64,000 nt of DNA from Octopus sinensis (lineage: Eukaryota). Positions within the stretch are counted from its first letter, which is position 1. The number at the start of each line of letters is the position of its first letter. This document shows, in pieces, positions 2,984-58,806 of this stretch. A program made the position numbers and the translations under genes. The stretch covers positions 90,892,001-90,956,000 of the forward strand of contig NC_043001.1 in NCBI RefSeq assembly GCF_006345805.1, read 5' to 3'. The notes beneath the pieces were generated by a model. It was not told the DNA's origin. It was given only the letters and a program-made list of their open reading frames with translations, and did not search any database.

Positions 2984-3124
2984 CCTCTTCCTGTTGATAC
3001 ACTTCAAGGATGGACACTGTATTCTTTTGATAATGGTACTAGAATATGGTGGCACAACTTTACCATATCGGGTGCTAGCATTACAGTCTTTGCTTCTTTT
3101 GGTGGAGTTGCAGTGTCATCAATG
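2984..3124 (+). CDS. Exon A (PLPVDTLQGWTLYSFDNGTRIWWHNFTISGASITVFASFGGVAVSSM), start of START-like domain 1
   Basis: ttttcttttaag acceptor, ATG|gtaagt donor, 47 open codons; GW..Y..D.G.RIW resembles the START N-terminal strands; phase 0 fits the next exon. Confidence 0.8.
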
Positions 3125-6100
3125 GTAAGTACAATACTGTTGGCTTAAAAACTGATTGGTTAGGTAAACATTTTTTTTAAATTCTGGAAACAAATCTTGC
3201 ATTTCTTCAGCAAGCTAAACTCTTTTGTAAACTTAAGATATTTTCTTGCTTGCATGACTGGAAGATTTTGAAAATTTGGGTGTTATATATTGTTGGAACA
3301 ACTGAATTTACACTGAGAGCAAGTTCTCATCCTACTTTCCACCTGTGTTTGGGACTGGATGTCTTTGTTTTGATGCATTCAGGAGTAGTGATGTTCAATT
3401 TTTATGTTGAGCTGCATTATTTGAACTTGGCTCAAACTTACAAGAAGACTTGCATCCATTGTATGACTAATGAAACATACACGATTATACTGCTCCTACT
3501 ATATTTATTGCCAGGAGTCAGTCTTTTGTCCAGTATCTACTTACAAATAGATAGCAAGCTATTAAAATTAAGCATCCTTGCAATATACATATTAGTATCT
3601 GCAGCAAAGTACAAACTCAACTTGTAACCTAGAATAGTTTTATTTTTCATAAGTATTTTTGTATAACTTGGCTCATTTGTCAAAGAACTGCGTAAATTTT
3701 GAAACTAAAAAAAATCGGCCAGTCAAAAGATCTAATTGATAATGCGATTAAGACAAAAAGTTAATAAATATCTGAGTGCACACACAAATTTGGAAAGGAT
3801 AGACTTACCTGTTGTGCAAGCAGAGAGTAAATGAAACTAAACATATTGTCTACATTAGTGTCATTGCCAACATAGTGTAAACATTAACACTCAGACAAAA
3901 GTGCAATGAAATCTTACGAGAGAAACTTCTGATATTGTAGAATCTAATTTAAATTATGCGGTAATTAGGTGTACTAAAAGGTTAATAAATGTAGTTTTGT
4001 TTACCCTAACCAATTTGTCTTAAATTATTAATTTATCAAGCCCGTTTAACAAATTTTTAACTTGGTTTTAAGACTTCCAATGAACCATCAATTTGAATAT
4101 TTTCAAAATACGATATAGTTATGAAACAATTTTTATTACAATCTTTTTATTTTCATAATTATTACATTGAAATGTTTTATAGATCAATGTAAGAACACTG
4201 AGCGTATCTTCAATTTCTGACTGTTTAATGTACGCATCATATGGTTAATTCTTTATTTACAGACTGTATTCCAGGTTTTAAAAGATATCAGCCACACATG
4301 GAGTTGGAAGCCTGGTGTTATGTCCACATCGTACATTTTGCGAGGCAGCAGCAAACAGAAAGCTGATCCAAGATCATCACCTTCTTTGTCTTCAGGAAGT
4401 TACTCTTCAAAGTCAGCTAATTATGATGTCATTGCTGAAGAACATTTAAAGAGTGTATCTGATGGTTCAAAATCATATAGCATACCTTGCCAAATGCCAA
4501 TCACTAATACTGAAACTGTGACATTGCAGAGGTGAGTTTGAGTTATTCCAACTTTGAACAGTACAGTTTTAAAACTTGACCTGTTAAATACATACTTAAA
4601 AAAAAAAAAATAAATGCACCCTTTTAAAGCCTAGCCAGGCTCATGGGCCCGGTTTCCCAGTTTCTATGGTGTGTGTGTTCCCCAGCTGGACGGGACACCA
4701 GTCCATCGCAGTGTTACTCATTTTTGCTAGTTGAGTAGACTGGAGCAATGTGAAATGAAGTGTTTTGCTCAAGAACACAACGCGTCGCCTGGTCCAGGAA
4801 TCGAAACCACAATCTTACGATCATGGTGCTGACACCCTAACCACTAAGCCACTGCCAGAATAAATAAACTCGCATTGTAGCTATTCACAAATTTCACAGT
4901 CATTATCTTAGTTTTAATGTGCTCTTTTCCATGCTTGGTTGCGCCAGATAGAATTGACTGAAGTAGATTTTCTAAGGCCTGATGCCCTTCCCTATCACCA
5001 GCCCCTACATGTTTTCATGCAAGGTAATATTTCCTTGATTGGACCCCCCCCCCAAGTTTCATTTTCTTAACTCTGCTCTTTAACTCTATTTCTAATTGCT
5101 GTAATTAAGACTAATTTTGTGACAATGAGTTGTATTGGTTTTTTCCCTAGATATTGGGATTGTGATAACAGTGGAGGTGGTTGGTTATTGGAATCCAATG
5201 AGAAAACAGGTGACTGGAAAGTTTATATATTTCAACCTCTCAAAGGTAAACCAATATATTTTTTTATTTCTTTTTCTCTTTAATTCATTGCTGTTCACTT
5301 TTTTTTTTTTATATAAAGCTTTTTTAATAGAAAACTTTTATCAGGAAAAGTCAGTGATCACACTCACCAGGCTCTGAGACTGGTGTGAGTTATCTGGTTG
5401 ATTGAGTTTAAACATTTCAAATTGATGGCTGTGAGAAGAGATGAATTGAAAGAAAATTCCCAGGAATTGACACAGGAAGGAAAAAGTGGTATAGTGTTTA
5501 GTCAGAGGCTTGGAAAGAAGGGTATACAACTAGCTTAATCTAAAGAGCTGGTGGTGGTGGGAGTCATTTAGTGACAAAAGAATTGATAGTAAAGTGACAG
5601 TCTGATTGGTAAAACTCAACTCATCAATACACTAAAACCTCTAGTCCACAGTTTGATGGCTTTCTTTTGGTTATAACTTAAGATGTTGTTTAGCAAAAGC
5701 AGTAACACCCTTTAAGATGTGTGAGCAATAATTTATTGTGACTTTTAACTTTTTAGAAAGTTAACCGATCAGAAGGTGAGGTATTTTCTGATTTGGGAGG
5801 TAGTTTTAAGCAATATAGTAAACGGAATTTCCAGGAGAGTTTATCAGAGATTGTGTTCAGTACTTGAAGTGACTTTAAAGGATGTTTAAAAGTGGAGCAA
5901 GTTTTTAAGACTGTTTTTTTCATGTGCTGTAATTGTATATTTGGGGGTACTTAGACAAAATTAGAGAATATTTTACTTAACCTCTATTCATGGAAGATGT
6001 GGGTTTTGACTTGAAGTGCCTAGATTACAGTGGGTGGCAGGCACATTTGGAAGGTTTTGGAGGAGTGAAGAGTGGTGTCATCTGCATAGGAGTGTTGGTA

Positions 6101-8112
6101 GAAGTGTCAATGAGATTCAAGTGATGAGAAATACATGACTATAGGTGTGCAATTTAGTTAAGCAGTTTTTCATGCCAGGCACTGTCAAATGTAGCGATAT
6201 TACTCATAACAAACCTGAAATGGTGTGAGGTCACTTGCAAATAACATGGCAGAGCCAGTCCCCAATAGTTTGGCTTTACAGGAGCCACACATGTTACTGA
6301 GGAAGGCAAGAGACTCAGGATGTCAGATAAAATGATTGTTATTGCTTGTATTCACTTTGAGATGTTGGAAGTGAAGGCTATAGGCTGATAGTGATTTTCA
6401 TGTTGAGTTTGGTAATTTTTCTGACTAAATATAATACGAGTCTGATATAAATTTTTGCTCATGAAAAAAGGTTGCCTCTCTATTGTAAATTCATGTAACC
6501 TCAGTAATGCAATACTTCTTACAGTAGTGAAATGTCTACCAACAGCAATGTGTTGGGTCATTGAAACTTAAGTGTCTTTCCCAAAGACATAGGACAATGG
6601 CCATGATACAATACTTATTTTGAACTGATATATTTGAAATGACATTTAAAAATAAATTTCTTTCATAATTTTTGGTTAAGAAGAAAAAATATTTCCCCCA
6701 ACTTAGTCGAATAAGGAACTTCAACCATTGTATGTGGGGAATATTTCCAAAGAGATTTTAAGTTTCTTAAATTTTGTCTTCTTTAAGTTGTGATATTAAG
6801 TGAAGTTTTTTACTACTACCATCAGCAGTTTGTGTGTGCGTGTCTGTGTCTCTGTTTGGGGCTGTGTTTACGTGTGTTTATAGCTACAAAAGGTATTAGT
6901 TTCAACAACCAGTATTCCAATTGTTTAACAATTTAATAAGCAAATCTGTTAAATCCAATTAAGTGGTTGAATATTCCACAGAAATTTGTTACCTTTAGTG
7001 TAATCGTTATACAGAATCCACATGATGTGGTGTGAGACTTTTCTGAATTTCATTGTCCTGGCCATTTGAAAGGGTATCACAAGATTGTCCACTCAGACAT
7101 TTTTTTTATAAACATAAATTTTCTTTGTTTCAGATACTTTCCAGTGCTTGATAACTATTTTAGTACATGAAAAACTCCAATCTCCAATTGCTACAGCTGC
7201 CATAACTTCTCGTTTGCTTGGATCTCTTCAGAATTTTTTCTTGTACAAAAAAGTAAATCCACCAACATTTCCATACGTTTTATTTCATGTGGACAATCAT
7301 AGGATGTTTATGCAGAGGTCAGCTTCCTTCAGAAGATCTGGTCATAGCAAGGACACTAGATTTTTTAATAGATTCCGGTCACTGTTAGAAAAAAAACCAT
7401 CAATGAATTCCAAAATATTATCTAAAGAAGAACGCCAAAAGACTGAAGATATTCTGCGACCATTAACCTTTCCCTCAGAAGATTTAATGGCAAGTTGCTT
7501 AGTAGAAGATTCTACACACAGTCTAACCTCTTCTTCTGCATCATCTGGATCTGTAAAATCTTCAAAAGACACTCTGGATAATCAGAATAAATTAGCAGAT
7601 CCTGATAAGGATAGCGTGTCAGAAGACGAAGTGGATTCAAAGACAAATGGACATGCTGTATCTGGTTCACTACCACGCAGTGCTTCAGTTCCAGAAGGTG
7701 GCTATAACATTCCTACTAATTCACCTAAGGGTATGTGCAGCAAGTTTTAATTTTTTTTTCTGATTGGATTTTCTGATATATATGTATATATCATCATTTA
7801 ACGTCCGCTTTCCATGCTGGCATGGGTTGGACGGTTCAACTGGGGTCTGGGAAGCCAGAAGGCTGCACCAGGCCCAGTCTGATCTGGCAGTGTTTCTACT
7901 GCTGGATGCCCTTCCTAACGCCAACCACTCCGTGAGTGTAGTGGGTGCATTTTACGTGCCACTGGCACAGGTGCCAGATGCTGCTGGCAGACAGCCACGA
8001 TCGGATGGTGCTTTTTACGTGCCACCGGCACAGAGACCAGACGAAGCTGGCAACGGCCACGGTTGGATGGTGCTTTTTATGTGCCACCGGCATGGAGGCC
8101 AGTCGGGCGGCG

Positions 8113-8188
<76 letters not shown>

Positions 8189-11100
8189 ATAAATAAAAAT
8201 CATTAAGGTGGGGCGCTTGCTAATAGACGATGGCTAACCTCTCATGGCATGATGGCATCATCCACGGTAAAAAAAATGGGACCTGCGATGACCTATTTGT
8301 GGTTTTTATTCCAATGCTGGGCACCTGATAGGATCGGTATTTTAAATAATGATCTTATTCATATAAATTTATATATATAGTTTTCTAAGTTAACCAGGCT
8401 ACCACTAATTAAAATTTAAGTGTAGCACATAATTGGATAGGTGCTAAGTTTTTTTCCATATTTCTTATCTTAATTACTTCACTGGTACTAACTTATTAAT
8501 TATGGAATTAATGGTATTCTCTTTCAGTTTGAGTAATTAAATTGTTTAGTTAAGCTGTATCTCAAAAGTGCTAGATAAGTTTGAGCTTATTACCTGAAAT
8601 AACAGACCAGAACTTGATTACTTACATCATTAAAGAAATAAGTTTTTTTTAATTTTCAGTTTTTTTTTTTCCTTGCCTTACATGTGCTTTTTTCTTTTTC
8701 CCTTGTTCTAGATCATCGATTTGTATTTTACCAAACAGTTGCTAATGAAGCAGCAGCTACTCTCTTAAAAGAGGTAAGCTCTTTCTTGGTTACTTTTGAA
8801 GCCACTATTGACACTACTTGTAATGGTTATTACATACAACCATTTGTGTTATTTGGGCTATTCCTCTCCTGGAACTACTTCCTTTTAACATCTATCCCTC
8901 ATTTTCAATATTATCATCATCATCCTCATTTAACGTCCGCTTTCCATGCTAGCATGGGTTGGACGGTTCAACTGGAGTCTGGGGAGCCCGAAGGCTGCAC
9001 CAGGCCAGTCAGATCTGGCAGTGTTTCTACAGCTGGATGCCCTTCCTAACGCCAACCACTCCGAGAGTGTAGTGGGTGATTTTATGTGCCACCGACACAG
9101 GTGCCAGACGAGGCTGGCGAACGGCCACGCTCGGATGGTGTTTTTTTTTAAATTTAAAAAAAAAATTTTTTTTTTTTATCTCTTAGTTTATTTTCCATTG
9201 ATCAACCTTTCCACCCTAAGCTACATCTTAATACAGCATCTCATTCTCAGCACCCTTTCGTATTAGGTTTGCCATGAATTGCCCCCCTCCACTTTTGTTT
9301 GCCACTTACTCTTTCCATTCCTATGTACCTCTGACCCTCATCTAGGTCACTGTACATCTCCACTCACTCCTGCTTTACCCACCCATCCCACATGTCTTTT
9401 CCCCTTCTTTCCTCTGCAGTTTTATTACACTGTTGCTCTCACTTTTTCTGTACTGCCATTTATTTCTTTCACTCCTCTCCCAACTTGTGTTTCCTATCAA
9501 CCATGCCTCCAACTATGTTCAACATTCACTTCTGTAACCCCTATCTCTAACCATCTATCACATGCCACTTTTTATTCACCTTCATGTGTACCTTGAAGAT
9601 ATGCTCAGACACTTTTGCCATCATCTTTTTGAAATAGTGCAAGCCTTCTATAATTAGTTATTTTGCCAATTTTTTTTCCTGATATATTTAAAAAAATGTT
9701 TTCACTTGTTTCAGTCTTTGGATTGTGGCCATGCTGGGACACTGCCTTGAGGGGTTTTAGTTGAACAAATTGCTCCTGGTATTTATTTTTAAGCCTGGTG
9801 TGCTAGCCAGATCAATTACATTCTCACCAGTGTGGTAGCCAAATCTGTTACATTCTCATCAGACCCTAACCCCAGCATAGACTAGTCATTAGTGACCTTA
9901 GACTCCAGGCCAGAAGGATGCCAAGAAGCAGACCAATCAGGAAAAGAATTTGGAAGCTTAAGGACCCTTCAGATGGTCAGGCTTAGGGACATCCTAACTG
10001 AGAAATATGAGTGAGGAGGAGCTACAGACTTGTGACATAGAGGGCAACTGGGAATTACTGTAGGACAGTTTACTGAGTGCCACAGACCAAATCTGCAGCT
10101 GGTGCAAAGTCCCATCCAGACCTAGGGTAATGTGGCGGTGGAATGATGCAGTATACAGGGCCATTAGAGCAAAGAAACAGGCCTGGAAGAGTTGGGGTAG
10201 CAGGGAACTGTATATAGCACCACTGATGCTATATTTCTGGTAAGGCAGCAGCAGGAGAAATACATAGCCAAATATAAACCCTTGTACTTGGCTTTTGTTG
10301 ACTTCGATAAAGCCTTTGACAGTGTTCTCTGATTCCTTATCTGGTGGTCAATGCAGAAACTAGGGATAGATGAGTGATGGGTGAGAGCTGTACAAGCCAT
10401 GTATAGGAACGCTACCAGTAAGGCAGCAAAGAATTCAGGGTACATGTTGGGGTTCACCAAGGATCAGTCCTCCAGGTAGTAACAGAGGGATTTAAGACAT
10501 GCTGCCCCTGGGAGCTCCTCTATACTGATGACCTTGTTCTTATAGCTGAATCACTACCAGAACTAGAGAAGTTCCAGGTTTGGAAGCAAGGTCTAGACTT
10601 GAAGGGCCTTTAGAGTTAACCTAGCAAAAACAAAAGTCTTAGTAAGTAGGAAGGCAGACAAATCACAAATCCATCTGGTAGATGGCCTGCTCGATCTGTA
10701 GAAAAGCATAAGTAGAAGCTCTATAAGCTTTGGACACATAATAGGTGCAGCAATATCAGAAGAAGGTTAACAGGGAAAATAGCTTTGTGTGTGGAAGATT
10801 TACAGGTACAATAAACACCAAAAATAAAGAGAAAAGATTCCAACTGCCTGAGGTATAAACTAGAGATAGCTTTTGTTATCTAGGTGACCAAGTTAGTAGC
10901 TGAGGTGGATGCTCCAAGAACATAGCTATGATAATAAGAATAGGCTGGGCAAAGTTCAGAGAGCTGCTACCTCTGTTGGCAATAAAGAGCCTATTCCTCA
11001 GTGAAAGGCAATTTGTATGATGCCTGTGTGGGAACAGTTATGCTACATGGCAGTGAAACGTGGGCTGTGACAGCTGAGGATATGTGTAGGCTTGAAAGAA

Positions 11101-14100
11101 ATGAAGCCAGTCTGCTTCACTGGATATGCAGTGTGCATGTTCGACAGTGTAAGCATCTTGAGAGGAAGGTTGGGCATAAGAGGCATTAGATGTGGTGTGC
11201 AAGAGAGATGACTGCACTGGTATGGTCATGTGATGCGTATGGACGAGGGCAGCTATGTAAAGAAGTGCTGATTTCTAACTGTAGAGGGAACCTGTGGAGA
11301 GGTAGACCCGGGAAGACATGGGATAAGGTGGTGAAGCATGATCTTCAAACTTTGGGCCTCATAGAGGCAATGACTAGTGACTGAGACCTTTGGCGATATT
11401 TTGTGCTTAAGACCCGTCAAGCCAAGTGATATCATAGCCGTGGCTGATGCTGGTGTCATGTAACTGGCACCCATGCCAGTGGACCATAAAAAGCACCTTT
11501 CAAGTGTTGGGCCTCACAGAGGCAAAGTGGCTGATGCTGGTGGCATGTGAAAACCTCCTTTCGCGTGTTTGGTCTCACAAGAGGCAATGACCGAGATGTT
11601 TGGTGTTATGTTTGAGAAGACCCATCAAGTAAAATTAGTCATGACAGATACTGGTGTCACATAAATAGCATTTGTGCCAGTGGTACGTAAAAACATCCAT
11701 TAGACTCTTGGAGTGGTTGGCTTAGGAAGGGCATCCAGCTGTAGAAACCATGCCAAATCAGACTAGGGTCTGGTGCAGCCTTCCAACTTGCCAGCCTAGG
11801 TCAAACCGTCCAACTCATGTCAGCATGGACAATGGATGCTAAATGATGATGGTAATTAGTCTGTTGCTCTCTCTTGCTGAACTGCTAAGTTATAGGGACA
11901 TAAGCAAATCAACACCAGTTGGCAAGCAGTGGAACTGAGAAATGCATGCACACAACTGGCTTTCACAGTTCCCACTCACTATATTCACTTAAGGCTTTGG
12001 TTGTCTAAGGCTGTACTAGGAGCTGCACTGTTGGATTGAACCTGAAGTCATGTGATTGCAGTGCAAGCTTCTTAATTGCACTGATCATTTTACATGCACG
12101 TGTCTTGGGATAATGTTTTATCTGAACTAGTAATAATTTTTTATTTATACACATTATTGCTTAGTGCTGACGCCCTGTAATGTTTTATGTAATTTTGTAT
12201 CTGATTTCCTTGTATGTTAATCATTCTACCATGTTAATCATTATATGATAAAATTAGATCAAAGGTTGTTGACAACATCTATATAATAAAGTTAATTAGC
12301 ATAATGCAACTTATAATATCCTGTATTTTTATCTTTCATCTATTGTACTTCAGCTTATTTTCACTTACAGGTCTAAATATTTATTTATTCTGTTCAGTAA
12401 AATTTATCTAACTTGTTAAAAAAAATATTGCTTTGATTAAAAAAAAACAAAAGCTTTTTTGCTTCTTTATGAGTAGAAACATTGTCATTGATAAATTTTG
12501 CAGAGGAAAATTTTTTTTTTCTTTGAACCCCACAGTTCCTGTTCATCTTTTATTGCCCGTTTATCATATTTCTGTGAAAATGCTTTGCCTTTGTTTTGAT
12601 TAATTAAAAAAAAAATGAATTTAGTAATCAACTGTCATTTATTAAGCTAGTGTTTGGAACATCAGTTTGCATGAAATTTTGATGGAAAGTTTTAATTTAG
12701 ACCACTTTAAAATTGAATCAGCAGAAGAGGCATTTTTATTAGATGCAATGAAACAAAATTCCTGCAACAAAATGGGGTAGTTTTGATCTATGTATATAAT
12801 AAGTAAAAATCCTGTTGAAGTTAGTTGTGCTTTGCATCCCTTTTGGACCAGTGAAAGAAAGTACCGGTCGAGTACTGAGGTTGATGTAATTGACTTATCC
12901 CATCTTAAGAAAGTACCAGTCGGGTACTGAGGTTGATGTAATTGACTTATCGCATCTTAAGAAAGTACCAGTCGGGTACTGAGGTTGATGTAATTGACTT
13001 ATCCCATCTTAAAATTGTTGTTCTTGAACCCTGTAGCAGACTAACATCTCAGTCAAGGGGAATGTTGTGATCTCAGTCACTTGTATGCCATGAAAACTAG
13101 GTAACTGGCCTTTCCATTGCTAGGGCTCCAAAAAGGGAAAAAATAAAAAGCTTTCTGCATCATTCACACTTGTAATGTATTTAAGATTAATTATAACCAA
13201 GAAAGTAAGATGTTAACTTTTTAGATAATTGAGAAGTCAACATTTTATAATGTATTGGTAAAGGCACTAAGCATATTTTGCATTAGATTAGCTGGAAGCA
13301 GAGCAGATAAAATTAGAGAAAGAATAGCTGTTTGGAATGTTGAACTAATTAGAAACTGACAGGTAGTTATCTAGTTTATGAAATGAAACAGAACCAGTGA
13401 TGGGCTACTATATATTATGTTTATTTTTTCAATCATGTGAGATTGCTCTCTTTCTCTTTACAGCTAACTCTATCCAGCAACATTGATTTACAATCTCAAA
13501 CAGAGAACAACAATTTGACTGGACGTTGGGTGTAAGTAAAAGTGTTTCGAATTTTGTTGTTTAGCTAACCTTAACTAGTTAAGATCAATCAGATTTTATA
13601 ATTGAATTTTAAGGCCGAATATTCTGTGTAACTAATGACTTTTAATGTTTAACCTTGTACATGTGTAAAAATTCTGTTATTCTTTTATTCTTTCAGTCAA
13701 TTGACTGTGGCCATGCTGGAGCACCGCCTTTAGTCGAACAAATTGACCCCAGAACTTATTCTTTGTAAGCCTAGTACTTATTCTATCGGTGTCTTTGCTG
13801 AACCGCTAAGTTACGGGGGATGTAAACACACCAGCATCAGTTGCCAAGCGATGTTGGGACAGACAGACACGCGCGCACACACACACACACACATATATGT
13901 ATATCTACATACACGACGGGCTTCTTTCAGTTTCTGTCTACCAAATCCACTCACGAGGCTTTGGTCAGCCTGAGGCTATAGTAGAAGACATTTGCCCAAG
14001 GTGCCATGCAGTGGGACGTAACCCAGAACCATGTGGTTGGTAAGCAAGCTACTTACCACACAGCCATTCCTGCACCTGTATGTCTGTATTATTTGTTGAG

Positions 14101-17878: not shown

Positions 17879-17909
<31 letters not shown>

Positions 17910-20900
17910 CTCTCCCTCTCTCTCCTCTCTCCCTCTCTCTCTCCCTCTCTCTCCCTCTCTCTCTCCCCTCTCTCTCCTCTCTCTCTCTCTCTCTCCCTCT
18001 CTCTCTCCCCCTCTCTCCTCTCTCTCTCTCTCCCTCTCTCTCTCTCCCCTCTCTCTCTCCTCTCTCTCTCTCCCTCTCTCTCTCCCCCTCTCTCTCCCCC
18101 CTCTCCTCTCCCTCCTCTCTCTCCCCCTCTCTCTCCTCCTCTCTCTCCCTCTCTCTCCCCCTCTCTCTCCCCCTCCTCTCTCCCCCCTCTCACTACCCCT
18201 CTCACTACCCCTCTCACTACCCCTCTCTCTACCCCTCTCTCCCCTCTCTCTCCCCCTCTCTCCCCCCTCTCACTACCCCTCTCACTACCCCTCTCACTAC
18301 CCCTCTCACTACCCCTCTGCATAGAACCACTTCGGCAATTACTTGAAAAAATATACTGAAAATTAGTTTTAACCTAACGGTAAATGTTTGCAACTACATA
18401 ATTCATAATGGATATCTTATTTTTTATTTATTTTTTTTTTTAACCCTTTTAACTCCTCTTAAAGACATTGATTCAGACTTCACCAATTTGATGGAAACGG
18501 TTAATAAATAGCTCTGCAAATGGCCAACAAAAAGAAAGAAAAAATAAGATAAAGTTCAATGAATATCTAATCTTAGGCAAATAAGGGAGGCAACTCCGGA
18601 CGTTTTGGTTTAATTAAACTTGTGTAAAATAATGGCCATAAGTGGTTAAAGTTGTCAAAATTGAGTAAATATCCAAACACACATACTGTAGAAAACATTG
18701 ATTAGTAGATTAGTGCCATCATACTTAATGAAGTTGAGCAATAAAATCTAATTTTTTTTGTCTTTACTTCTACAACTCTATATTAATGTACATAGTATTG
18801 TATATACTAGTGCATATCATTCTCTTTTACTTGTTTGAAATTTACTGTGACCATGCTGGAGCACCGCCTTTAGTCGAACAAATCGACCCCAGGACTTATT
18901 CTTTGTAAGCCTAGTACTTATTCTATCGTTCTCTTTGCCGAACCGCTAAGTTATGGTGATCTAAACACACCAGCATCAGTTGTCAAGCGATGTTGTGGGG
19001 GACACACACACATACATGATGGGCTACTTTCAGTTTCCGTCTAGCAAATCCACTCACAAGGCTTTGGTCGGTCTGAGGCTATAGTAGAAGACACTTACCC
19101 AACGTGCCACGTAGTGGGACTGAACCCAGAACAATGTGGTTCGTAAGTAAGCTACTTACCACACAGCCACTCCTATGCCTATCATTGTACATATCTGTGT
19201 AATGGTTCTTTTATTACTCATCTGGTATATATGAAGTATTGCTTATACTGAAACATGTTGAGATGTTGGATATACCAAGATAACATTTAATATTAATCGA
19301 GTCAGTGATTTAAAAAAATTTTTTTTTTTATACCTGCCCCATCATCATTGTCATTGTTCATTGTCTATGTTCTGTACCAGCAGGGGTTGGACAGCGTGAC
19401 ATGATCTGATGGGTTTGAAAACTGTCATACTCCAATGTCTGCTTTGGCATGGTTTAATGGCTCAATGCTCATCCTAGCACCAGTCACTTCACAACATGTT
19501 GTGTGTGTGTGTGTGTGTGCCCCTGTCTCATCAGTACTAGTGAGTTGCCATGCAGCTTGAATGACAGATACTCTTCAACTAAGTGGGGATGTAATAGTGA
19601 TTTTATGCTAGGAGATGAGGGGTTCAAGTATGAGAGAATAGCCAAAACTGAACAGGTCTCTTGCTGTAAAGGAGTTACATGGTTACTCATATTATAGGAA
19701 AGGCTGAAAATAAGGTGGAGCTTGGGTGGAAAGAAGATAAAGTTAGTGGTAATGAAGTGTCAGGGTGGAACCTCAAAGAGGCGTGTAGAAGTGGAGACAG
19801 GAGAACAAGGATCAGTGGATAGAGGTTGCTTTTACTATCTTTTTTCTCTTACTTGTTTCAGTCATTATTGTGGCCTTTGCTGGGGTACATCTTAGAATTT
19901 TTAGTCAAATGAATTGGTCTCAAAACTTATGTTTTTAAAGCTTCGTATTCATTTTTATAGGTGTAAGGACATAAACATACCGAAACTAGTTGCCAAGAGG
20001 TGACTTCAGTTTTCATCTACCAGATTCACTTACGAGGCTTTGGTTGACCTGAGGTGCCACACTGTAGGGCTGAACTCAGAACTATGTGGTTAGAAAGCAA
20101 AGTTATGACACAGCCATGCTATATATTGAAATTTTCCCTTCTAGTTACATTACGACTTGCTACATTACAGTACTAACTTAACTGTTATTCTTCATGTGGA
20201 TCTTGTCTCAGTTGTCTCTTAAAACCCTTTGATTTTCATTCCATCTTCAGAAAATGCTTAAAGGAAATTTTACAAAGCTATATGCATTGATGACTATTTT
20301 GCTTTGTGATACACATAATTTTGAGTTTAGAAACCTATTGTAAAGATAATGTTTGGTATAGATTTAGTGTTGTTTTACTTGTATTCATCTCTGACATTTG
20401 TAATGATAGAAAAATTTACTTTTCTAGTTGAATAAAGAGCACAGCCATGGCCATGTGTTTCAAGAAGTTTACTTCTCAGCCACATTGTTTCAAGTCCAGT
20501 CTTGTTGTGTGACACCTTGGTAGGTGTCATCTGTTATAGCTCCAGGCTGAATGTTATAGCCTGAGGCTGGCCAAAGCCTTGTGAGTGAATTTGGTAGGCT
20601 GAAAGCAGCACATTGTGTATGTGTGTGCTTATGCTTGCATTTTACAAAAGTCTCTTGCTACAAGTGGTGTTATTGCTGTAACTTCCGTCAAGAAATCGTT
20701 TCTTCTCTTGAAAAGCAGGTGAGGGTTAGTGACAAGAAGGGCATCTGACTGAAACAATGCCTCAATAATGTATTTAATCCATAGGGAAAATAGATATAGA
20801 ACGAAAAATGAATTTACAATGTATTTTTACATTTTCCTTTGTTTTGTTTCCTTCCAGGTTTTGTGGCTTAGATGATGAAATTGTCATTTTACGAAAAATC

Positions 20901-23900
20901 CCCGAAGAAGGTAGTTCTTTACAAAGGTATTGAAAATAAAACGCTCTGTACTTAAAAAAAAAAATGCTAAAGATGTTGAGTTTGTAGAAGTGTCTATAGT
21001 TTGAAACTAGCAGATAACCAAAGAAAAAAATTTAATATATCCTTTTATTTTTTCTAAGGACAACCAGAAATGAACTACAGTGTGGAATTATTTTTCTATT
21101 TTAATGCTTCCTTTTAATCTTAATTATCTAATTGTGTGTTCCGTTTTCACTTCAGCTACATGGGTAAAGGTATAGTCCAGGTGCCTCCAAAAGTCGTATG
21201 GGACACAGTTCGAAATCCACGAACAAAGTTTACTTATGATGAGAGTCTTAAGGTAAGAAGTTTTGAAACTTTGCATAGTGTGGTGATGCATTTGCTTAGC
21301 ATAACGCCTGATGGCTAATTTACTTTTGAATTTTATGAATCTGATTGTCATTTCTAGCTTTCCTGAGAAATAGATAAATCTTAAAGTGTCAAACTTTTGG
21401 CTTTTCAAATTCTAAGGCCTCTCTTCCAACTCTTAACATACCTGAAACTGCTTCATAGTTTTGAAAATTTAAATTCAAATCTTGGATTAATATCATGTTA
21501 TATAACATTAAATTTCAATATATAAACATGTTTATCAATTTATTTCACTAAACCTCTTATAGTCTCTGATTATTTTGGTACTTTAGACCTAAAATGACAG
21601 TATATTCTTTTTGGAAATGTGGTCACACCAGGTTAAGCTTTCTAAAATGAATTCAATTTATAATGGTCATTGAATTGTAACAATGGGGTAGTCAAAAAAA
21701 GCTTGTAATAAGTGGGATGGTGGTTAAGGTAATTTGAGAACTGTTTTAAAACGTATGACTTATTTCCCCTTGTAACTTCTTACATCCGACTGACAGCATG
21801 AATATACTCTGTAGATGCTTCTTGATGCTTCCGTTTTATCAATTTCTTTAAATCTGTTTAAGATGCTGTAAAAATAATTTTGTTCATTTGAGAATATATT
21901 TTATTAATTCAGTCTGAAGTTTTTAGTAAAATGCAATTAAAAAAAAAGATTGTGGAATAGAGAAAAAAAGAAAAAAATTGAGCTTAGTTCTTCAAACTGA
22001 ATATATACCCATCAATTATCTAGCCTATTTTGTTATCTACAGCAGGCTGTAACTGTCTATGCTGTCCATTTACAGTTGTTTAACCCCAGGTCAGTCCTGA
22101 TCTCGCAGACATATTGTTTTTCTTTACAAATGTGTATTATCTGGAATTACATTATCCAGTTCATTCTTTTAACACTGTATAAAATTTTTAAATATGCTAA
22201 AATTAGCAGAATACCCTCCTCAAATCATAACCTACAAACTTTCTCACGAGCTCTTTCATTTAGTTATGTACTGGATGAGTGAATGAAAAGTATCTTTCTT
22301 CCTCAGATATGTCTCCCAGCTCTTAAGATTAGAATTATTGACCCTTCATCTACATCCCTATAGTCTTAACCAGTTTTCACTTTCAGATATTTTTTTTGCA
22401 CTTTTTTTTTTCTTTTCAATATTGAATGTTATTTCACTGTTATAACTATGTTTTTGTTTGTATTTCAGAAAGTTGATGTTTTGGAATCATTTCTTGAGAG
22501 CCTAAAAATTGGTAAGATTCAGTAAAATGTTATATTTGCATATTTAAGATTTAATTGATGGAACCATATTTCTTTAGCTCTGGACCATTCTTTGTTGTGT
22601 TTTTGTCATTAAAAAGTTACAAGTTAGCAATAACACAAGTTATTGTAAAGATAGAATCAGGAGTTGCTGAATAAGGAAAATGTGTTGGAAAATGATGGTA
22701 TATATGAAGTGTATCTAATAAATACCAGCTATTATGGTTGTTGTAGAAAGGGACATTAAAGTTATAAAGACAGGGAAAGCAGCTGCACCATGTTGGATAG
22801 TTGAGATAATTACAGTATCCTGATTGTCAATCAGGTAATATTGGATGTTTGTCTCTAATGACTAATGTAGCATTATCATCATGAACTGCCACAATGGTAA
22901 AGGAAATGCTTGAGAAAGAAGCAATCATTAGAGGCATTAAACTGTTGGATCAATCATAAAAGTGACAAGGGTTAGCAAGGAGATAATTAATGAGTTTGTG
23001 CCTGGATGTGGAACTGATGTCTTATTCCTAATGAGACAAAACAATTTCTTAACCAAAACTAAAGACTTTGAATTCATTCATTTGGAGAAAGTCCTGACAA
23101 GGTACTGTGTTCCACAAACTGGTTGGTAGTCACTAAAACAATGGAAAGATGAATGATTTGTGAGAGGTGTACAAGTAATGTGCTGTCAGCAAAATGAGTT
23201 AACAATAAGGTTAGCAAGCAATTTAGCAGAACATATTTCAACTCTTAATAACTGCTAAAACTCTACAAAGCTCAAGTGAGGTCCACAGTCGAGTACTGTG
23301 CCTACATTTGGGACCATGAGGTTGCTGTTTACATTGACATCCTGGACTGCATCCAGAGAAGGGCCACTTGTCTGATTGGCATTCCATCACAAATGGACAC
23401 ACTTCAGCTTCTGGCTTGTGGGCATGCTGTCTCTTCTGTCTTTTCTATTGCTACTATTATGGCCTCTGGGTTGGACTGTTTGCTATGGAACTGGATCCAA
23501 TTGACTGTTGTGGCATGGTTTCTATGACTAGATGCCCTTCCTAACACCAACCACTTCAGTGTTTGCCGGGTGCTTTCTATGTGCCACAGGCATGGGTGTG
23601 TTTATACAGCACCAGTTTGAGTGCATTCTATGTGGCACCAGCACCTGTAAAGGACAATCTTGTATGTATGGATGAAAGAGATTTTACTTAGCTTGGTGTG
23701 TTTTCTCAAGTACAGCTAATCACAAACTTGTCGACTTGTGGGTGCAGACATGACTGAATATCTAAAAATGTTTTTAATTCTTCAGATTGACTTGTCTTGT
23801 GAATAAAATCTTGTAAAAGGAAACTGTGTGGAAGCCTTTCAGAAGGATGACATTGTTAACAATGACTCATGTTGCTTATATTTTTTTTGTTTTTTTTTTT

Positions 23901-26900
23901 GTTTTGCAGTATATTTCTACCATGAAGTGGTTGCACTATTCCGTAAAGACTGCTGTGATGCTTGTGTTGTTTTGAGTGAAAGATTGGAGAACAACCGCTT
24001 CATTTTATCAATGCAGTCAGTAGACTATGAGAATACACGGAGAGACAAGGATGCTACAAAAGCATTAGTTAGTTGATCCTTTTATCTTTTTTTTTATTTT
24101 TAAACTACCAATCACTTGTTACCGCACTCCCTTGCATTACTGTTACTATCACTAACATTGACTATTATTAATACTACTATTGAAACAACCTTCTGCTATC
24201 ACTTTTTTTTCCCTCTTACTGTCACTACCATCATCATTACCATATTTTCTATGTGCAAATTAACCAAATAGGCCAAGTGCTGTGCTTAAAGATGTTTCTA
24301 AATGTTCTTTACTTTGGTAATGTAGTATGGTCTTTCTTGTAATGGTTTATGTTTTAGCCATTACACTGTTTTCTCAACATCAGACATTCTGACTGTTAAC
24401 AGCAATAGACATTCTAACTTAACGATGGAAGTAAAGAATATGTACACCATAACAATATGTTCAGCATAACAAAAACCTTAAACCCTAACCCTAAATAACG
24501 GGTGTATGTATTTACTTTTGCTGTCTTTAATATATACCAAGACTTCATGGAGTATGGGTTCCAGAATTATATAATGCTGTGTTCTAGAATTATAAAATAT
24601 GAAAGCTGGTGTTTAGAAGAACTGAAACCCACCCAGAGCTACCTTCAAATCAATGACTGCTTAGTCTTTTCATAGAATTGTTTTTAAGTGTCACAGAAGG
24701 AAATAAAATTGTTTTCAGTCATTAGTTTCAGACAGTCTCTTTGGCCTACTTATGTCTATTTGTAGGGATATTTTCTCTTTACATTAGCATACCTTAAGTG
24801 CCTTTGACAATGAAACATTCAAGTCCATTGACTCTTCCTTTTGAAGTTTGACCAGTAGTTGATATTGTAACAGTAAACATTTGAACAGCTTGGAAGGAAT
24901 GTCTGACTACTTTCTATTTCAATAAAACTCTTATTTTAAAAGATAATGCCATGATTAGACAGGCAAACATCAACTAGAAAAGTATATTTTCTTCAAAATT
25001 TAGACTCCTTCATGATCTGACCAATATCAAGCTCAGGTTTGTGTTGGTTTGCTTTCCTGCAGTACAGGAGTCACGGACAAGTTGCCTGATAGATGCACTT
25101 TTGATATTGTAACTGTGCTAACAGCAATTTGGACCATCTCTGTATGGACTTGTATAAGCACAAAGATGAAGAATGGAAAAATGAAATAAAGAGCATGGCT
25201 ATTTGAATTTTTTCTTTTTTTGCATCTTACTCTTGTAACAGCTGTTGTATCTCATAATATAACTGATATTTTTTTTTTTTTTTTTTTTTTTCAATTAGTC
25301 CTGAATATTTCCTGATTTTTTTTTCCTGCCACTCATAATGAATGTGCAGTTTAAAAGAAATCTGTTAATACAACCCAAGATGGTTGTGTGCAGTTAGATT
25401 AGCATGGATATAATGATAAATAGCTTAATGTCATTAGGAAAGTAGAATGAATTGTTAGTATGTTGTTTCATCCTAGTACAGAATTTGAAAAGGACTGTAT
25501 TCTATTTTACAGATTAAGCCAAGTGGTTGGATAATTGAGCCATTGGTCAAAGATAATCGGCTGTGTTCTATGGTTACATATATAATGCAGGTAAGTAAAG
25601 GGATCCTTGATTCCCGTTTGTAGTATTCTACCTGAGTATTGAATTTAAATTGGACAATGCATTTGAAGATAACTAGCCAACTTGTAACTTTAAATAGAAA
25701 AAAAAAAAAAAAACTGAGCAAAATAATATAACTCAGTGAAAAGCTTCAAGGGTGGTGTATGTTATTTTTCTTTAATTTTGGTTAGTGTTGAATACTTCAT
25801 GTTGATGGTATCTTCCTTGTAGACATGTTGGTCAAAGCAAGCTGATATGACAAAGAGTTTGTGGATAAAACCTTATTCAAGCTGTTACTCTCACATATAG
25901 TTGATGCTAGAATATATCTACCTATCCTGCGAATATTTCTGGGAAATTTTGTATGAATTTCATTAACTTGACACAGGCCCGTTTTTGTAGACATGGGATA
26001 TAGTTAACTGAATTGACCTCAGTATATTTTTGTCAGTTATTTTATTTGCTTTAAAAGATGGAAATTCAAAGTTCACATTAGCAGCATATGAGCTCACAAC
26101 ATCTAAAACATCTTGGCAAATAGATTCATCATCATTTGAACTAAATCTATCACTTAAAGAAAATATGAAAGTTACACACCCTAATAGGTGACCATACTTT
26201 TTTAATACTCAAACAGAACAGGAAAGGGTCTCTATGCATGCTTGTGTGCATGTACATGCGCGCACACACACACACACACAATATAACCTTTCCATTTTAC
26301 CATTTGCCAAACCTACTTGCAAAGATTTGGTCAGCCTAATGCTGTAGTAGAAGAAACTTTCTCAAAGTGCCTTTTAATGGCAGAACCTGAAACACTGTTA
26401 GGAACCAACTTTCTTAACCATACAGCCATACCTAATCTGTTTTTCTATTGTGTATGTTTTCATTTAAAAATAGTGATTTGACACAGATAATGAGCTGACA
26501 GAAATGGCTAAGTAGTTTTGTCAGTTTCCTTCACAATGATTTTAAAGTCCTTACGAGACCAAGTTTTTTTTTCCATTGTCCTGTGATCAGTAAATTAAAT
26601 ATCAATAATGTACAAGGATAGAGTCCATTAGTTACACCTACCCACCTACAAATTGGACTGATGCTTAGTAATAAAATCTATAATGATGATGCTGGCTATT
26701 TTATACCCTCTAAAAACATGTTTGAGCAGTGGTAGTTTAAAGTTAGTAGTAGGGAAGCAGATTTAATTTGATTGCTTGGTGGTAGGATGTATCAAGGTGT
26801 GTTGAAAGAAATTTTCACAGTAGATTAACCTTTTTGTTAGATTATTTCTATTGAAATACTCTGCCTTTTGTTTCAATTTTGAAAAATATTGAATTTAATC

Positions 26901-27405
26901 AAATAAATTTATCATTCCTAAAACGGTGTTTTAAATGAAATTGATATGAAATTTTAATGGAGTTTTTAAGATCACTTTAAACAGGAAGTTTGTATTATAG
27001 AATCATGGACAGTCCCATGCAGGTTGGTATCAAAAGGTTTAAGCACCCTATAATTCTTTTGGTTGCTGGCAAACCTTTATCTTGTAGGGATTCAAGGGAG
27101 AATATACAGGGACAATTATCATTTATCTTCTCTAGACTTCTGGAAGATTTGCCACTCAGTAATTCAAGTAGTTCCTGCATTAGAAGACATTATTTTTCTT
27201 GGAATTGAATATTTTTCTCTGTAATTTAATTTTTGTTTTCAATTATTTATTACAGATGGATTTTGGTCCTCCAAAGACAGCCACTGATCGATATCCATTC
27301 GAGGACCTTGTAATCCGACAACCACTCAGCATTGCAGATTTACGTCGTTACTTGCGATCGGCAGTGGTATGGGCTCGTCATCACTCATCTCCAGCACGTA
27401 GCTGA
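2984..27405 (+). CDS. Spliced gene model (5'-incomplete): tandem START-domain lipid-transfer protein; C-terminal START is STARD9-like
   Basis: 12 exons with AG/GT boundaries whose phases chain without frameshift (0,0,2,1,1,0,2,2,0,1,0,0); 1827 nt = 608 aa + TGA. START hallmarks: YMGKGIVQVPPKVVWDTVRNP, IKPSGWIIEP, SMVTYIMQMDFG, C-terminal helix RQPLSIADLRRYL. Confidence 0.9.
4263..4531 (+). CDS. Exon B (TVFQVLKDISHTWSWKPGVMSTSY...TETVTLQR)
   Basis: tttatttacag acceptor, AG|gtgagt donor, open frame matching ORF 4320-4535; phase 2 end. Confidence 0.85.
4610..4852 (-). mobile_element. tRNA-derived SINE, V-domain-like family
   Basis: Minus strand: Pol III A/B boxes (gtggcttagtgg, ggtttcgattc), then ttgtgttcttgagcaaaacac...gcgatggactgg; same family at 30512 and 38646. 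Confidence 0.8.
5151..5245 (+). CDS. Exon C (YWDCDNSGGGWLLESNEKTGDWKVYIFQPLK)
   Basis: ttttttccctag acceptor, AAG|gtaaac donor; phase 2 in and phase 1 out fit both neighbours. Confidence 0.85.
7134..7730 (+). CDS. Exon D: end of START-like domain 1 plus Ser/acidic linker
   Basis: ttctttgtttcag acceptor, G|gtatgt donor; 597 nt open frame coinciding with the 200-aa ORF 7148-7750. Confidence 0.9.
7791..8112 (-). mobile_element. RTE-LINE 3' UTR fragment with (GAT)n tail
   Basis: Reverse complement of the 3' end of the RTE copy at 9870-11851; ~63-bp internal subrepeats; followed by (AT)n at 8113-8180. Confidence 0.8.
8712..8773 (+). CDS. Exon E (DHRFVFYQTVANEAAATLLKE)
   Basis: ccttgttctag acceptor, GAG|gtaagc donor, phase 1 to 0. 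Confidence 0.85.
8913..9144 (-). mobile_element. RTE-LINE 3' UTR fragment
   Basis: catcat tail plus ttaacgtccgctttccatgctagcatggg, nearly identical to the copy at 16215. Confidence 0.8.
9870..11851 (+). mobile_element. RTE-clade LINE, 5'-truncated and degenerate (RT domain to tail)
   Basis: YLAFVDF.KAFD, GVHQGS, ELLYTDDLVLIAES, MLHGSETW, GRPGKTW; ends in gatgatg tail. Confidence 0.9.
12857..13012. repeat. 3 x 52-bp tandem repeat within a SINE core
   Basis: Unit gaaagtacc.gtcg.gtactgaggttgatgtaattgacttatc.catcttaa starts at 12857, 12909 and 12961. Confidence 0.95.
13464..13531 (+). CDS. Exon F (LTLSSNIDLQSQTENNNLTGRW)
   Basis: ctctttctctttacag acceptor, GT|gtaagt donor, phase 0 to 2. Confidence 0.8.
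13677..14077 (-). mobile_element. tRNA-derived SINE, abundant family A (central (CA)n)
   Basis: Head ggctgtgtggtaag...gggtt.cgtcccactgc on the minus strand; many copies in the window. Confidence 0.85.
14397..14746 (+). mobile_element. tRNA-derived SINE family A, older copy
   Basis: tggctgtgtgg...gggttcagtcccactgc...gccttgg...ggtggtgcccaagcatggc; opposite orientation to the 13677 copy. Confidence 0.75.
14974..15633. mobile_element. hAT-like MITE interrupted by a Helitron
   Basis: Termini caatgctactc / gagatgtactg; 8-bp TSD cttcagag / ctttagag (7 of 8). Confidence 0.6.
15159..15555 (-). mobile_element. Non-autonomous Helitron (DINE/HINE-like)
   Basis: Minus strand starts TC(TC)TATATA..AAAGCTGAAGTTGTCTGTG and ends hairpin + CTAG; inserted between A and T. 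Confidence 0.8.
16215..17236 (-). mobile_element. RTE-clade LINE 3' kilobase, well preserved
   Basis: ORF 16848-17195 KGRLYDACVRTAMLHGSETW...RRLHWYGHVVRM...GRGRPR, then 3' UTR with 63-bp repeats and (GAT)n tail. Confidence 0.92.
17824..18318. repeat. ~500-bp C/T low-complexity tract with 12-bp ccctctcactac subrepeats
   Basis: Direct inspection: no G in the tract; the overlapping ORFs are artefacts. Confidence 0.95.
18821..19180 (-). mobile_element. tRNA-derived SINE family A
   Basis: Same sequence as the 13677 and 29402 copies. Confidence 0.85.
20858..20926 (+). CDS. Exon G (VFCGLDDEIVILRKIPEEGSSLQ)
   Basis: tttccttccag acceptor, AG|gtattg donor, phase 2 to 2. Confidence 0.85.
21156..21252 (+). 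CDS. Exon H (SYMGKGIVQVPPKVVWDTVRNPRTKFTYDESLK), START domain 2
   Basis: ttttcacttcag acceptor, AAG|gtaaga donor; G.G.V..P...VW motif of START domains. Confidence 0.92.
22469..22511 (+). CDS. Exon I (KVDVLESFLESLKI)
   Basis: tttgtatttcag acceptor, G|gtaaga donor, phase 0 to 1. Confidence 0.8.
23270..23470 (+). mobile_element. CR1/Jockey-group LINE ORF2 C-terminal fragment
   Basis: RSTVEYCAYIW...LDCIQRRATCLIG...LQLL..AVSS resembles the post-RT region of these LINEs. Confidence 0.7.
23910..24067 (+). CDS. Exon J (VYFYHEVVALFRKDCCDACVVLSERLENNRFILSMQSVDYENTRRDKDATKAL)
   Basis: Long T tract plus gcag acceptor, TTA|gttagt donor (weak); open frame matching ORF 23828-24076; START core strands. 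Confidence 0.88.
25513..25590 (+). CDS. Exon K (IKPSGWIIEPLVKDNRLCSMVTYIMQ)
   Basis: tctattttacag acceptor, CAG|gtaagt donor; PSGW.I.P...VTY is a canonical START motif. Confidence 0.92.
27256..27405 (+). CDS. Terminal coding exon L (MDFGPPKTATDRYPFEDLVIRQPLSIADLRRYLRSAVVWARHHSSPARS*)
   Basis: ttatttattacag acceptor, C-terminal START helix, TGA at 27403-27405. Confidence 0.9.
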   Translation: MDFGPPKTATDRYPFEDLVIRQPLSIADLRRYLRSAVVWARHHSSPARS

Positions 27406-58680: not shown

Positions 58681-58759
58681 CTGCTATAGCCCCGGGCCGA
58701 CCAATGCCTTGTGAGAGGATTTGGTAGACGGAAACTGAAAGAAGCCTGTCGTATATATG

Positions 58760-58806
<47 letters not shown>

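What the first reader, a model, noticed from the sequence alone, without database searches (positions are those of the whole stretch)
2984..27405. Tandem-START protein with a STARD9-like C-terminal domain
Seen: 12 phase-consistent exons encode START-like domain 1 (exons A-D), a ~150-aa Ser/acidic linker and a full START domain 2 (exons F-L). Established: each of the 15 human START proteins has a single START domain. Inference: the motifs (G.G.V..P...VW, PS.WI..P, RQPL.IA.L..YL) match STARD9 as I recall it, but STARD9 is a kinesin with one START domain. This could be a lophotrochozoan lipid shuttle or sensor with two pockets, or a STARD9-related gene with a duplicated START. The ORF track misses the gene because most exons are short.
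Basis: partly seen in the sequence, partly recalled or inferred. Interest (0 to 1): 0.7.

Follow-up and report, generated by a model that had tools for sequence, protein, structure and literature searches.

The report
Membrane-anchored protein with two START domains
The window holds 12 of the 14 coding exons of an octopus gene for an uncharacterised protein that carries two lipid-binding START-fold domains behind a membrane anchor, and this family is conserved from corals to sea urchins but was not seen in vertebrates, insects or nematodes.

Summary
Twelve + strand exons between 2984 and 27405 all have AG/GT borders, keep phase and give 608 aa plus a stop. The protein is 98% identical to residues 61-668 of Octopus bimaculoides LOC106881316. 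Exons differ by 2% between the two species and alignable non-coding DNA by about 10%; dN/dS is about 0.18.

The tandem-START reading is supported. The C-terminal domain is a true START: 19 of 22 family members hit PF01852, and the family profile hits STARD6 at 1e-12. The N-terminal domain is invisible to Pfam. Its predicted structure (pTM 0.72) has the full START topology, and its top 37 PDB fold matches are all START domains. The N and C profiles also align to each other (HHalign 92%, E 7e-7).

Three parts of the interpretation need correction.
- The family is not lophotrochozoan-specific. It occurs in cnidarians, echinoderms, a hemichordate, chelicerates, annelids, a brachiopod, a nemertean and molluscs.
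- Upstream lies only a 60-aa segment with a membrane anchor, encoded outside the window. There is no kinesin or FHA domain.
- The link to STARD9 rests only on names given by other annotators. I could not test it.

Lipid binding or transfer is inferred, not shown. No paper on this family was found.

The parts
2984..3124 (+). Exon A (aa 1-47 of the window's 608): strands beta1-beta3 and the start of helix alpha2 of START-like domain 1, including the invariant P3, G9-W10, R20 and W22
   Evidence: (tblastn 3e-25, AG/GT borders)
4263..4531 (+). Exon B (aa 48-137): helices alpha2-alpha3 with the WKPG motif, strands beta4 and beta5, two predicted disordered Ser-rich loop insertions, and the start of beta6
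   Evidence: pLDDT below 50 in the loops at model residues 98-120 and 136-148
5151..5245 (+). Exon C (aa 137-168): strands beta6-beta8 of domain 1 (RYW...GGGW...FQP motifs)
7134..7256 (+). Exon D, first part (aa 169 to about 209): strand beta9 and the long C-terminal helix that close START-like domain 1. The end coordinate is approximate.
7257..7730 (+). Exon D, second part (aa about 210-367): Ser/Thr- and acid-rich linker with a short basic conserved patch (RF..RFRSL.EK ... IL)
   Evidence: the octopus linker between the profile-defined domain ends is 138 aa: 14% D+E, 27% S+T
8712..8773 (+). Exon E (aa 368-388): N-terminal helix of START domain 2
13464..13531 (+). Exon F (aa 389-411): loop and the G.W start of beta1 of domain 2
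20858..20926 (+). Exon G (aa 411-434): strands beta1-beta2 of domain 2
21156..21252 (+). Exon H (aa 434-466): the GKG...VW..NPRTKFTYDESLK region, the most conserved stretch of domain 2
22469..22511 (+). Exon I (aa 467-480), domain 2
23910..24067 (+). Exon J (aa 481-533), central strands of domain 2; donor is GTTAGT
25513..25590 (+). Exon K (aa 534-559): the PSGWIIEP strands of domain 2
27256..27405 (+). Exon L (aa 560-608 plus the TGA stop): C-terminal helix of domain 2 (RQPLSIADLRRYL)

Best explanation
The region is the last 12 of 14 coding exons of an intact, conserved Octopus gene. Its product has four parts.
1. An N-terminal single hydrophobic anchor of about 20 residues, encoded upstream of the window.
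2. A divergent START-fold domain that follows the anchor closely.
3. A disordered Ser/acidic linker of about 140-240 aa in the family.
4. A bona fide START domain at the C-terminus.

Shown: the gene model, the purifying selection, the two homologous START-fold domains, the anchor in orthologues, and the wide distribution in animals.

Inferred: the protein sits in a membrane with its bulk in the cytosol, because basic residues follow the anchor. Its C-terminal START binds a lipid, most likely a sterol-like one, because the nearest solved relatives are STARD6, STARD4 and STARD5 and other annotators name the family after STARD9. Held on a long flexible tether, this domain could shuttle or sense that lipid. 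The anchor-proximal START-like domain would either handle lipid at the home membrane or regulate or dock the other domain.
For: Gene model and selection:
- 12 exons with GT-AG borders give 608 aa.
- Exons diverge by 2% and introns by about 10% from O. bimaculoides; dN/dS is 0.12 for domain 1, 0.28 for the linker and 0.19 for domain 2.

C-terminal domain:
- Pfam START is hit in 19 of 22 family members, best 1.6e-21.
- The family profile against PDB gives STARD6 1.1e-12, STARD13 2.4e-7, STARD4 3.9e-7 and STARD5 6.8e-7.

N-terminal domain:
- The AF2 model has pTM 0.72 and core pLDDT 80-92. Its order of elements is a1-b1-b2-b3-a2-a3-b4...b9-a4.
- The top 37 Foldseek PDB hits are all START domains: CERT 5e-8, STARD4 with TM 0.56/0.67, and STARD13, STARD5, STARD6, ACOT11 and PCTP.
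- At E below 0.01, sequence-profile hits in PDB are START proteins only: 3qsz 1.9e-4 and STARD10 3e-3.
- HHalign of the N profile against the C profile gives 91.9%, E 6.8e-7, over 171 columns.
- In Solemya the C profile hits the N domain directly, iE 9e-5.

Architecture and anchor:
- An exhaustive search with the N profile found 85 clusters. Nearly every model of 570 aa or more carries both domains in the same order.
- 27 of 31 full-length models have a hydrophobic 19-mer in their first 60 or so residues (in the first 35 in all but one) with mean Kyte-Doolittle score above 2.0.

Transcript evidence:
- Contigs of 2.2-3.6 kb encode 687-712-aa two-domain ORFs in several species.
Against: - No lipid-binding, localisation or expression data exist for any member.
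- The octopus protein itself gives no Pfam START hit, even at E up to 10.
- The AF2 model of the C domain was poor, with mean pLDDT 52.
- The N domain has two long disordered insertions, after beta4 and after beta5 in the model. The second lies at the position of the lid loop, and the domain may have lost its cavity.
- No FFAT motif was found in any linker, so there is no evidence for a contact-site partner.
- The orientation of the anchor is inferred from flanking charges only. A cleaved signal peptide is not excluded.
Confidence: 0.8

Rival explanations
1. The N-terminal domain is a degenerate pseudo-START. It keeps the fold but no longer binds lipid, and serves as a membrane-docking, dimerising or autoregulatory module for the single functional C-terminal START.
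For: - The N domain is much more divergent than the C domain: mean column identity is 26% against 45%.
- It has no significant Pfam hit in 21 members.
- It carries long disordered insertions after beta4 and after beta5, the second at the position of the lid loop.
Against: - It has been retained with invariant Trp, Arg and Pro positions from cnidarians to deuterostomes.
- dN/dS in Octopus is 0.12, as low as or lower than in the C domain.
- The predicted core is confident.
- None of this distinguishes lipid binding from another conserved role.
Confidence: 0.3
2. The C-terminal domain is the invertebrate orthologue of the STARD9 START module. Vertebrate STARD9 would have arisen when this START was joined to a kinesin-3 motor, so the octopus gene is a 'STARD9-related' gene without the motor.
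For: - Independent annotations call family members STARD9 or STARD9-like: Argopecten and Mizuhopecten, Ptychodera, Holothuria and Acropora, Nymphon and Stegodyphus, and Mya.
- No chordate member of the two-domain family was seen.
Against: - This was not tested here. STARD9 is absent from PDB, and the two profile searches of the large protein database listed only short family members.
- Names transferred by best-hit pipelines are weak evidence of orthology.
- Among solved START domains the best match is STARD6.
Confidence: 0.3
3. The N-terminal hydrophobic stretch is a cleaved signal peptide, and the two START domains are lumenal or secreted lipid or carotenoid carriers.
For: The hydrophobic segment starts at residues 2-14 in most models, which is where signal peptides lie.
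Against: - The segment is long (19 or more residues) and very hydrophobic (Kyte-Doolittle mean 2.0-3.3).
- It is followed, not preceded, by basic residues, which is typical of a signal anchor with the C-terminus in the cytosol.
- As far as I know (from my own knowledge, not checked here), START proteins are cytosolic or membrane-associated on the cytosolic side.
Confidence: 0.12
4. The tandem arrangement is an artefact in which two neighbouring genes were read as one.
For: No RNA-seq from this species was available, and the intron between exons F and G is 7.3 kb.
Against: - Phase is kept across all 11 junctions with canonical splice sites.
- The same fused architecture is seen in more than 30 species.
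- Intron-free transcript-sized contigs of 2.2-3.6 kb encode the whole 690-710-aa protein.
Confidence: 0.03

Closest known systems
STARD9 (vertebrate kinesin-3 with a C-terminal START domain; lysosomal, cholesterol-linked; PMC10203878, PMC3127847)
   Same: It has a C-terminal START domain at the end of a long disordered region. Several genome annotations name members of this family after STARD9.
   Different: - The octopus family has no kinesin motor and no FHA domain.
- It is about 670 aa long rather than about 4600-4700.
- It has an N-terminal membrane anchor and a second START-fold domain, neither of which is described for STARD9.
- The sequence relationship itself was not tested here.
STARD4 / STARD5 / STARD6 (START-only sterol carriers)
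   Same: By family profile, STARD6 is the best sequence match to the C domain among solved structures (1e-12), with STARD13, STARD4 and STARD5 next at about 1e-7. They also give some of the better structural superpositions for the N-domain model (STARD4 TM 0.56/0.67).
   Different: They are soluble single-domain proteins of about 205-220 aa, with no anchor, no linker and no second domain.
STARD3 / MLN64 (membrane-anchored START at endosome-ER contacts)
   Same: In both, a START domain is tethered to a membrane through the protein's own transmembrane part.
   Different: STARD3 has a four-helix MENTAL domain, an FFAT motif and one START domain. This family has one N-terminal helix, no FFAT motif by pattern search and two START-fold domains.
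Bacterial di-domain aromatase/cyclases (StfQ, BexL; PMC13525633)
   Same: They have two diverged START/SRPBCC-fold domains in one chain, with a division of labour between the domains.
   Different: They are prokaryotic polyketide enzymes. They have no anchor and no long linker, and nothing indicates a closer relationship than the shared fold.

Membership tests
START domain (Pfam PF01852; helix-grip lipid-binding fold): C-terminal domain | Significant match to the PF01852 profile | tested here: inconclusive
   The octopus sequence (window and P0001) gives no START hit even at E up to 10. Argonauta reaches 2.9e-6 and Haliotis 1.5e-13. In all, 19 of 22 family C domains hit at E of 1e-3 or better, best 1.6e-21.
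START domain: C-terminal domain | Profile-level homology to START domains of known structure | tested here: met
   The family profile against PDB gives STARD6 1.1e-12, STARD13 2.4e-7, STARD4 3.9e-7, STARD5 6.8e-7, ACOT11, STARD10 and StAR. Foldseek hits of the low-confidence model at E of 1e-3 or better are all START domains.
START domain: N-terminal domain (exons A-D) | Helix-grip fold: N-terminal helix, nine-stranded antiparallel sheet with two short helices after beta3, and a long C-terminal helix | tested here: met
   The AF2 model has pTM 0.72 and exactly this order of elements. The top 37 Foldseek PDB hits are START domains, E 5e-8 to 2.5e-5, TM up to 0.67.
START domain: N-terminal domain | Significant match to PF01852 or a related Bet v 1-clan Pfam profile | tested here: not met
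   No member reaches a gathering score. The best results are Polyketide_cyc2 at 1.2e-5 (26.1 bits against a cut-off of 27.4) in a scallop, 3 of 21 weak Polyketide_cyc2 hits and 1 of 21 START at 0.098.
START domain: N-terminal domain | Sequence homology to START domains shown by profile methods | tested here: met
   HHalign of the N profile against the family's own C-terminal START profile gives 91.9%, E 6.8e-7, over 171 columns. PDB profile hits below E 0.01 are START proteins only (3qsz 1.9e-4, STARD10 3.2e-3).
START domain: both domains | Binds a lipid in an internal hydrophobic cavity | not testable with these tools
   Model coordinates could not be analysed for a cavity, and no experimental data exist for any member.
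STARD9 subfamily | N-terminal kinesin-3 motor (and FHA) in the same polypeptide | tested here: not met
   - Orthologues start with Met and a hydrophobic anchor 35-60 aa before domain 1.
- In O. bimaculoides the two upstream exons encode only residues 1-60.
- No N-profile hit is longer than 909 aa.
STARD9 subfamily | START domain groups with the STARD9 START in a phylogeny or as reciprocal best hit | not testable with these tools
   No STARD9 sequence or structure was reachable. The only support is names given by other annotators.
STARD3-type membrane-anchored START | Four-helix MENTAL domain and an FFAT motif | tested here: not met
   There is a single N-terminal hydrophobic segment only, and no FFAT-like match in 31 linkers with a strict pattern.

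The most novel reading that the evidence does not exclude
This is an ancient animal lipid-transfer protein, dating to the cnidarian-bilaterian ancestor or earlier, that works as a two-pocket relay. An anchor-proximal START-fold domain would load or unload lipid at its home membrane. A second START on a 140-240-aa flexible tether would carry the lipid to a neighbouring membrane. The family would have been lost, or reduced to the START module of STARD9, in vertebrates, and lost in insects and nematodes. That would explain why no model-organism work has met it.
Probability: 0.2. Interest if true: 0.7.

Novelty: new variant of a known kind. Interest (0 to 1): 0.5.

Why it matters
START proteins are a main class of non-vesicular lipid carriers. 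Their classification into six groups, each with one START domain per protein, comes from mammals. This gene belongs to a further group with a different build: a membrane anchor, a cryptic START fold, a long tether and a START domain. The group is widespread in marine invertebrates and chelicerates. None of the named members came from vertebrates, insects or nematodes, the usual laboratory animals. If both pockets bind lipid, it would be the first animal example I know of a tethered two-START transfer device. It would also bear on where the orphan START domain of STARD9 came from. If the first domain is a pseudo-START, it is still a clear case of a domain that standard annotation misses.

Tried and rejected
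- **Rough exon join against Pfam.** My first hand-joined exon set gave nothing. The exact 608-aa protein also gives no START hit. Single-sequence Pfam is therefore uninformative for the octopus protein, and the orthologues were needed.
- **HHalign with mollusc-only profiles.** This gave only 14% probability. It became convincing (92%) only after deuterostome, chelicerate and cnidarian members were added.
- **Large-database searches with the C-domain profile.** Two searches listed only a few short family members and no vertebrate START protein, even at E up to 10. The STARD9 question stayed open.
- **AF2 of the C domain.** With 12 sequences the model was poor, pLDDT 52, so I do not use it for detail.
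- **Search for the upstream coding exons in the window.** tblastn found no match at E up to 1000. The O. bimaculoides locus shows that both upstream exons lie beyond the window's start.
- **FFAT motif search in the linkers.** Negative.
- **Literature.** Four searches found nothing on this family or on tandem START proteins in animals. One preprint says only in passing that START domains often occur in tandem in eukaryotes.
- **Rest of the window, 27.4-64 kb.** ORFs there showed nothing genic beyond repeats.
Full report
**What is in the sequence**

A database search with a rough join of the visible coding pieces found a 668-aa protein, Octopus bimaculoides LOC106881316 (P0001), plus about 20 mollusc relatives of 640-710 aa. 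tblastn of P0001 on the window places residues 61-668 on twelve + strand blocks. Reading the borders gives these exons:

| Exon | Coordinates |
|---|---|
| A | 2984-3124 |
| B | 4263-4531 |
| C | 5151-5245 |
| D | 7134-7730 |
| E | 8712-8773 |
| F | 13464-13531 |
| G | 20858-20926 |
| H | 21156-21252 |
| I | 22469-22511 |
| J | 23910-24067 |
| K | 25513-25590 |
| L | 27256-27405 |

- All acceptors are AG and all eleven donors are GT.
- The joined CDS is 1827 nt, stays in phase and ends in TGA.
- The protein is 98% identical to P0001.

**Comparison with the O. bimaculoides locus**

The orthologous locus (L001) aligns to the window at about 89% identity in non-coding DNA, so the window comes from another Octopus species. 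The exons differ at only 37 of 1827 positions. dN/dS is about 0.18 overall and 0.12 in domain 1. The gene is therefore real, intact and under purifying selection.

**What lies upstream**

In O. bimaculoides two more coding exons precede exon A. The first encodes roughly residues 1-43, including a very hydrophobic segment. The second is a 17-codon exon about 2.2 kb upstream of exon A.

Neither exon is in the window. Window positions 1-1021 have no counterpart in L001, and the homology starts about 180 bp downstream of the small exon. The small exon must therefore lie beyond the window's start.

The upstream part is a 60-residue anchor segment, not a kinesin or an FHA domain. Mollusc orthologues all begin in the same way.

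**The C-terminal domain**

The octopus protein alone gives no Pfam START hit, but its orthologues do. Nineteen of 22 family C domains hit PF01852, best 1.6e-21.

A family profile finds solved START domains:

| PDB protein | E-value |
|---|---|
| STARD6 | 1.1e-12 |
| STARD13 | 2.4e-7 |
| STARD4 | 3.9e-7 |
| STARD5 | 6.8e-7 |

ACOT11, STARD10 and StAR follow. The AF2 model was of low confidence (pLDDT 52), although its fold matches at E of 1e-3 or better are again all START domains.

**The N-terminal domain**

This was the uncertain part of the claim. Pfam sees at most sub-threshold Polyketide_cyc2 (SRPBCC) matches. Three independent lines nevertheless agree.

1. A profile of the domain searched against all PDB sequences finds, at E below 0.01, only START proteins: Xanthomonas START 3qsz at 1.9e-4 and STARD10 at about 3e-3.
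2. The AF2 model is P0001 residues 38-283, of which 223 residues are encoded in the window. It has pTM 0.72 and core pLDDT 80-92. Its order of elements is helix, three strands, two short helices, six strands and a long C-terminal helix, which is the START helix-grip. Two disordered Ser-rich loop insertions are also present. Its top 37 Foldseek matches in PDB are all START domains, with E down to 5e-8 and TM up to 0.67.
3. With profiles that include distant members, the N and C domains align to each other over 171 columns (HHalign 91.9%, E 6.8e-7). In the bivalve Solemya the C-domain profile hits the N domain directly.

So the protein has two homologous START-fold domains. The first is highly diverged.

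**Distribution**

An exhaustive HMM search of 1.84 billion representative proteins with the N-domain profile found 85 clusters. Nearly every model of 570 aa or more has the N domain near residues 30-300 and the START domain near residues 400-750.

Named members come from:
- molluscs (cephalopods, gastropods, bivalves)
- a nemertean
- a brachiopod
- annelids
- echinoderms (crinoid, starfish, sea urchin, sea cucumber)
- a hemichordate
- chelicerates (horseshoe crab, scorpions, spiders, a pseudoscorpion; a sea-spider C-domain hit)
- cnidarians (Nematostella, Acropora)

No chordate, insect, crustacean or nematode member was seen among those I could name. The family is therefore old and animal-wide, not lophotrochozoan.

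Twenty-seven of 31 full-length models carry the N-terminal hydrophobic segment, and none has an FFAT motif in the linker. Transcript-sized contigs of 2.2-3.6 kb encode the whole two-domain ORF in several species. This argues against a fused gene model.

**How it probably works**

- **Shown:** a single hydrophobic anchor, a START fold close behind it, a 140-240-aa disordered Ser/acidic tether, and a START domain at the end.
- **Inferred:** the anchor is followed by basic residues, which suggests a signal anchor with the bulk of the protein in the cytosol.
- **Inferred:** the terminal START most likely binds a sterol-like lipid, because its nearest solved relatives are the sterol carriers STARD6, STARD4 and STARD5, and other annotators' best hit is STARD9.
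- **Inferred:** the first domain either handles lipid at the home membrane, as a relay, or has become a regulatory or docking pseudo-START.

I cannot separate the last two possibilities. The domain's conservation shows it is functional but not what the function is.

**Relation to STARD9**

The family lacks the motor that defines STARD9. Whether the C domain is closest to the STARD9 START could not be tested, because STARD9 is not in PDB and the large-database searches did not return it. The only support is that at least eight annotations from different groups name members 'StAR-related lipid transfer protein 9(-like)'.

**Literature**

Four searches found no work on this family. Two START domains in one chain are described for bacterial aromatase/cyclases. 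One preprint mentions tandem START domains in eukaryotes in passing.

**Verdict**

The tandem-START interpretation is supported by sequence profiles and by predicted structure. The taxonomic scope and the STARD9 framing need correcting. The gene is already predicted in public octopus annotation as an uncharacterised protein. What is new is recognising the cryptic first START fold, the membrane anchor, and the family's wide but patchy distribution in animals.

Noticed in passing
window 1282-2888 (+): Decayed Helitron remnant in the intron upstream of exon A. Stop-interrupted pieces match Helitron_like_N (2.5e-9) and the PIF1 helicase (7e-15). Most of it (1018-2772) aligns to O. bimaculoides at 90%, so the insertion predates the split of the two species.
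   Followed up: partly
window 1-1021: This stretch has no counterpart in the orthologous O. bimaculoides intron. Homology begins at 1022, about 180 bp downstream of where the 17-codon exon 2 lies in O. bimaculoides. An insertion or rearrangement in this species therefore pushes that exon outside the window.
   Followed up: partly
window 9654-11948: Clean 2.3-kb insertion relative to O. bimaculoides (L001 42606 and 42609 are adjacent there) in the intron between exons E and F. It carries retrotransposon-like ORF fragments, and a related copy lies inverted at about 16772-17235. No Pfam hit was found for the pieces tested.
   Followed up: partly
window 13678-14064, 14410-14741, 18819-19167, 28591-28980, 29403-29792, 58680-58996, 60789-60995 and fragments: A dispersed repeat of about 370-390 bp, possibly a SINE, is present in at least seven long copies on both strands at 70-83% identity, several of them inside introns of the gene.
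   Followed up: partly
window about 17800-18350, and 8130-8190: A long pyrimidine-rich (CT-type) low-complexity tract gives spurious ORFs of 170-230 aa in several frames ('SLSLSL', 'ERGERE'). A (TA)n microsatellite lies near 8130-8190.
   Followed up: no
P0100 (Nematostella vectensis LOC116604069, 837 aa): The sea-anemone member has three START-fold domains. The cryptic N domain spans residues 16-240. A well-conserved extra START spans 305-479; the protein as a whole scores 3e-41 against Pfam START over two matched stretches. The family's C-terminal START spans 604-831.
   Followed up: partly
window protein aa about 225-280 (window about 7300-7470): The otherwise variable linker holds a short patch conserved across molluscs (RF..RFRSL.EK ... 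..IL, with invariant I275 and near-invariant S251 and L276). In octopus it is preceded by basic RSASFRRS motifs that look like kinase sites.
   Followed up: no
P0004 (cephalopod transcript assembly, 709 aa): This transcript carries an extra 22-residue segment exactly at the exon C / exon D junction, which suggests an alternative exon or splice site there in another cephalopod.
   Followed up: no
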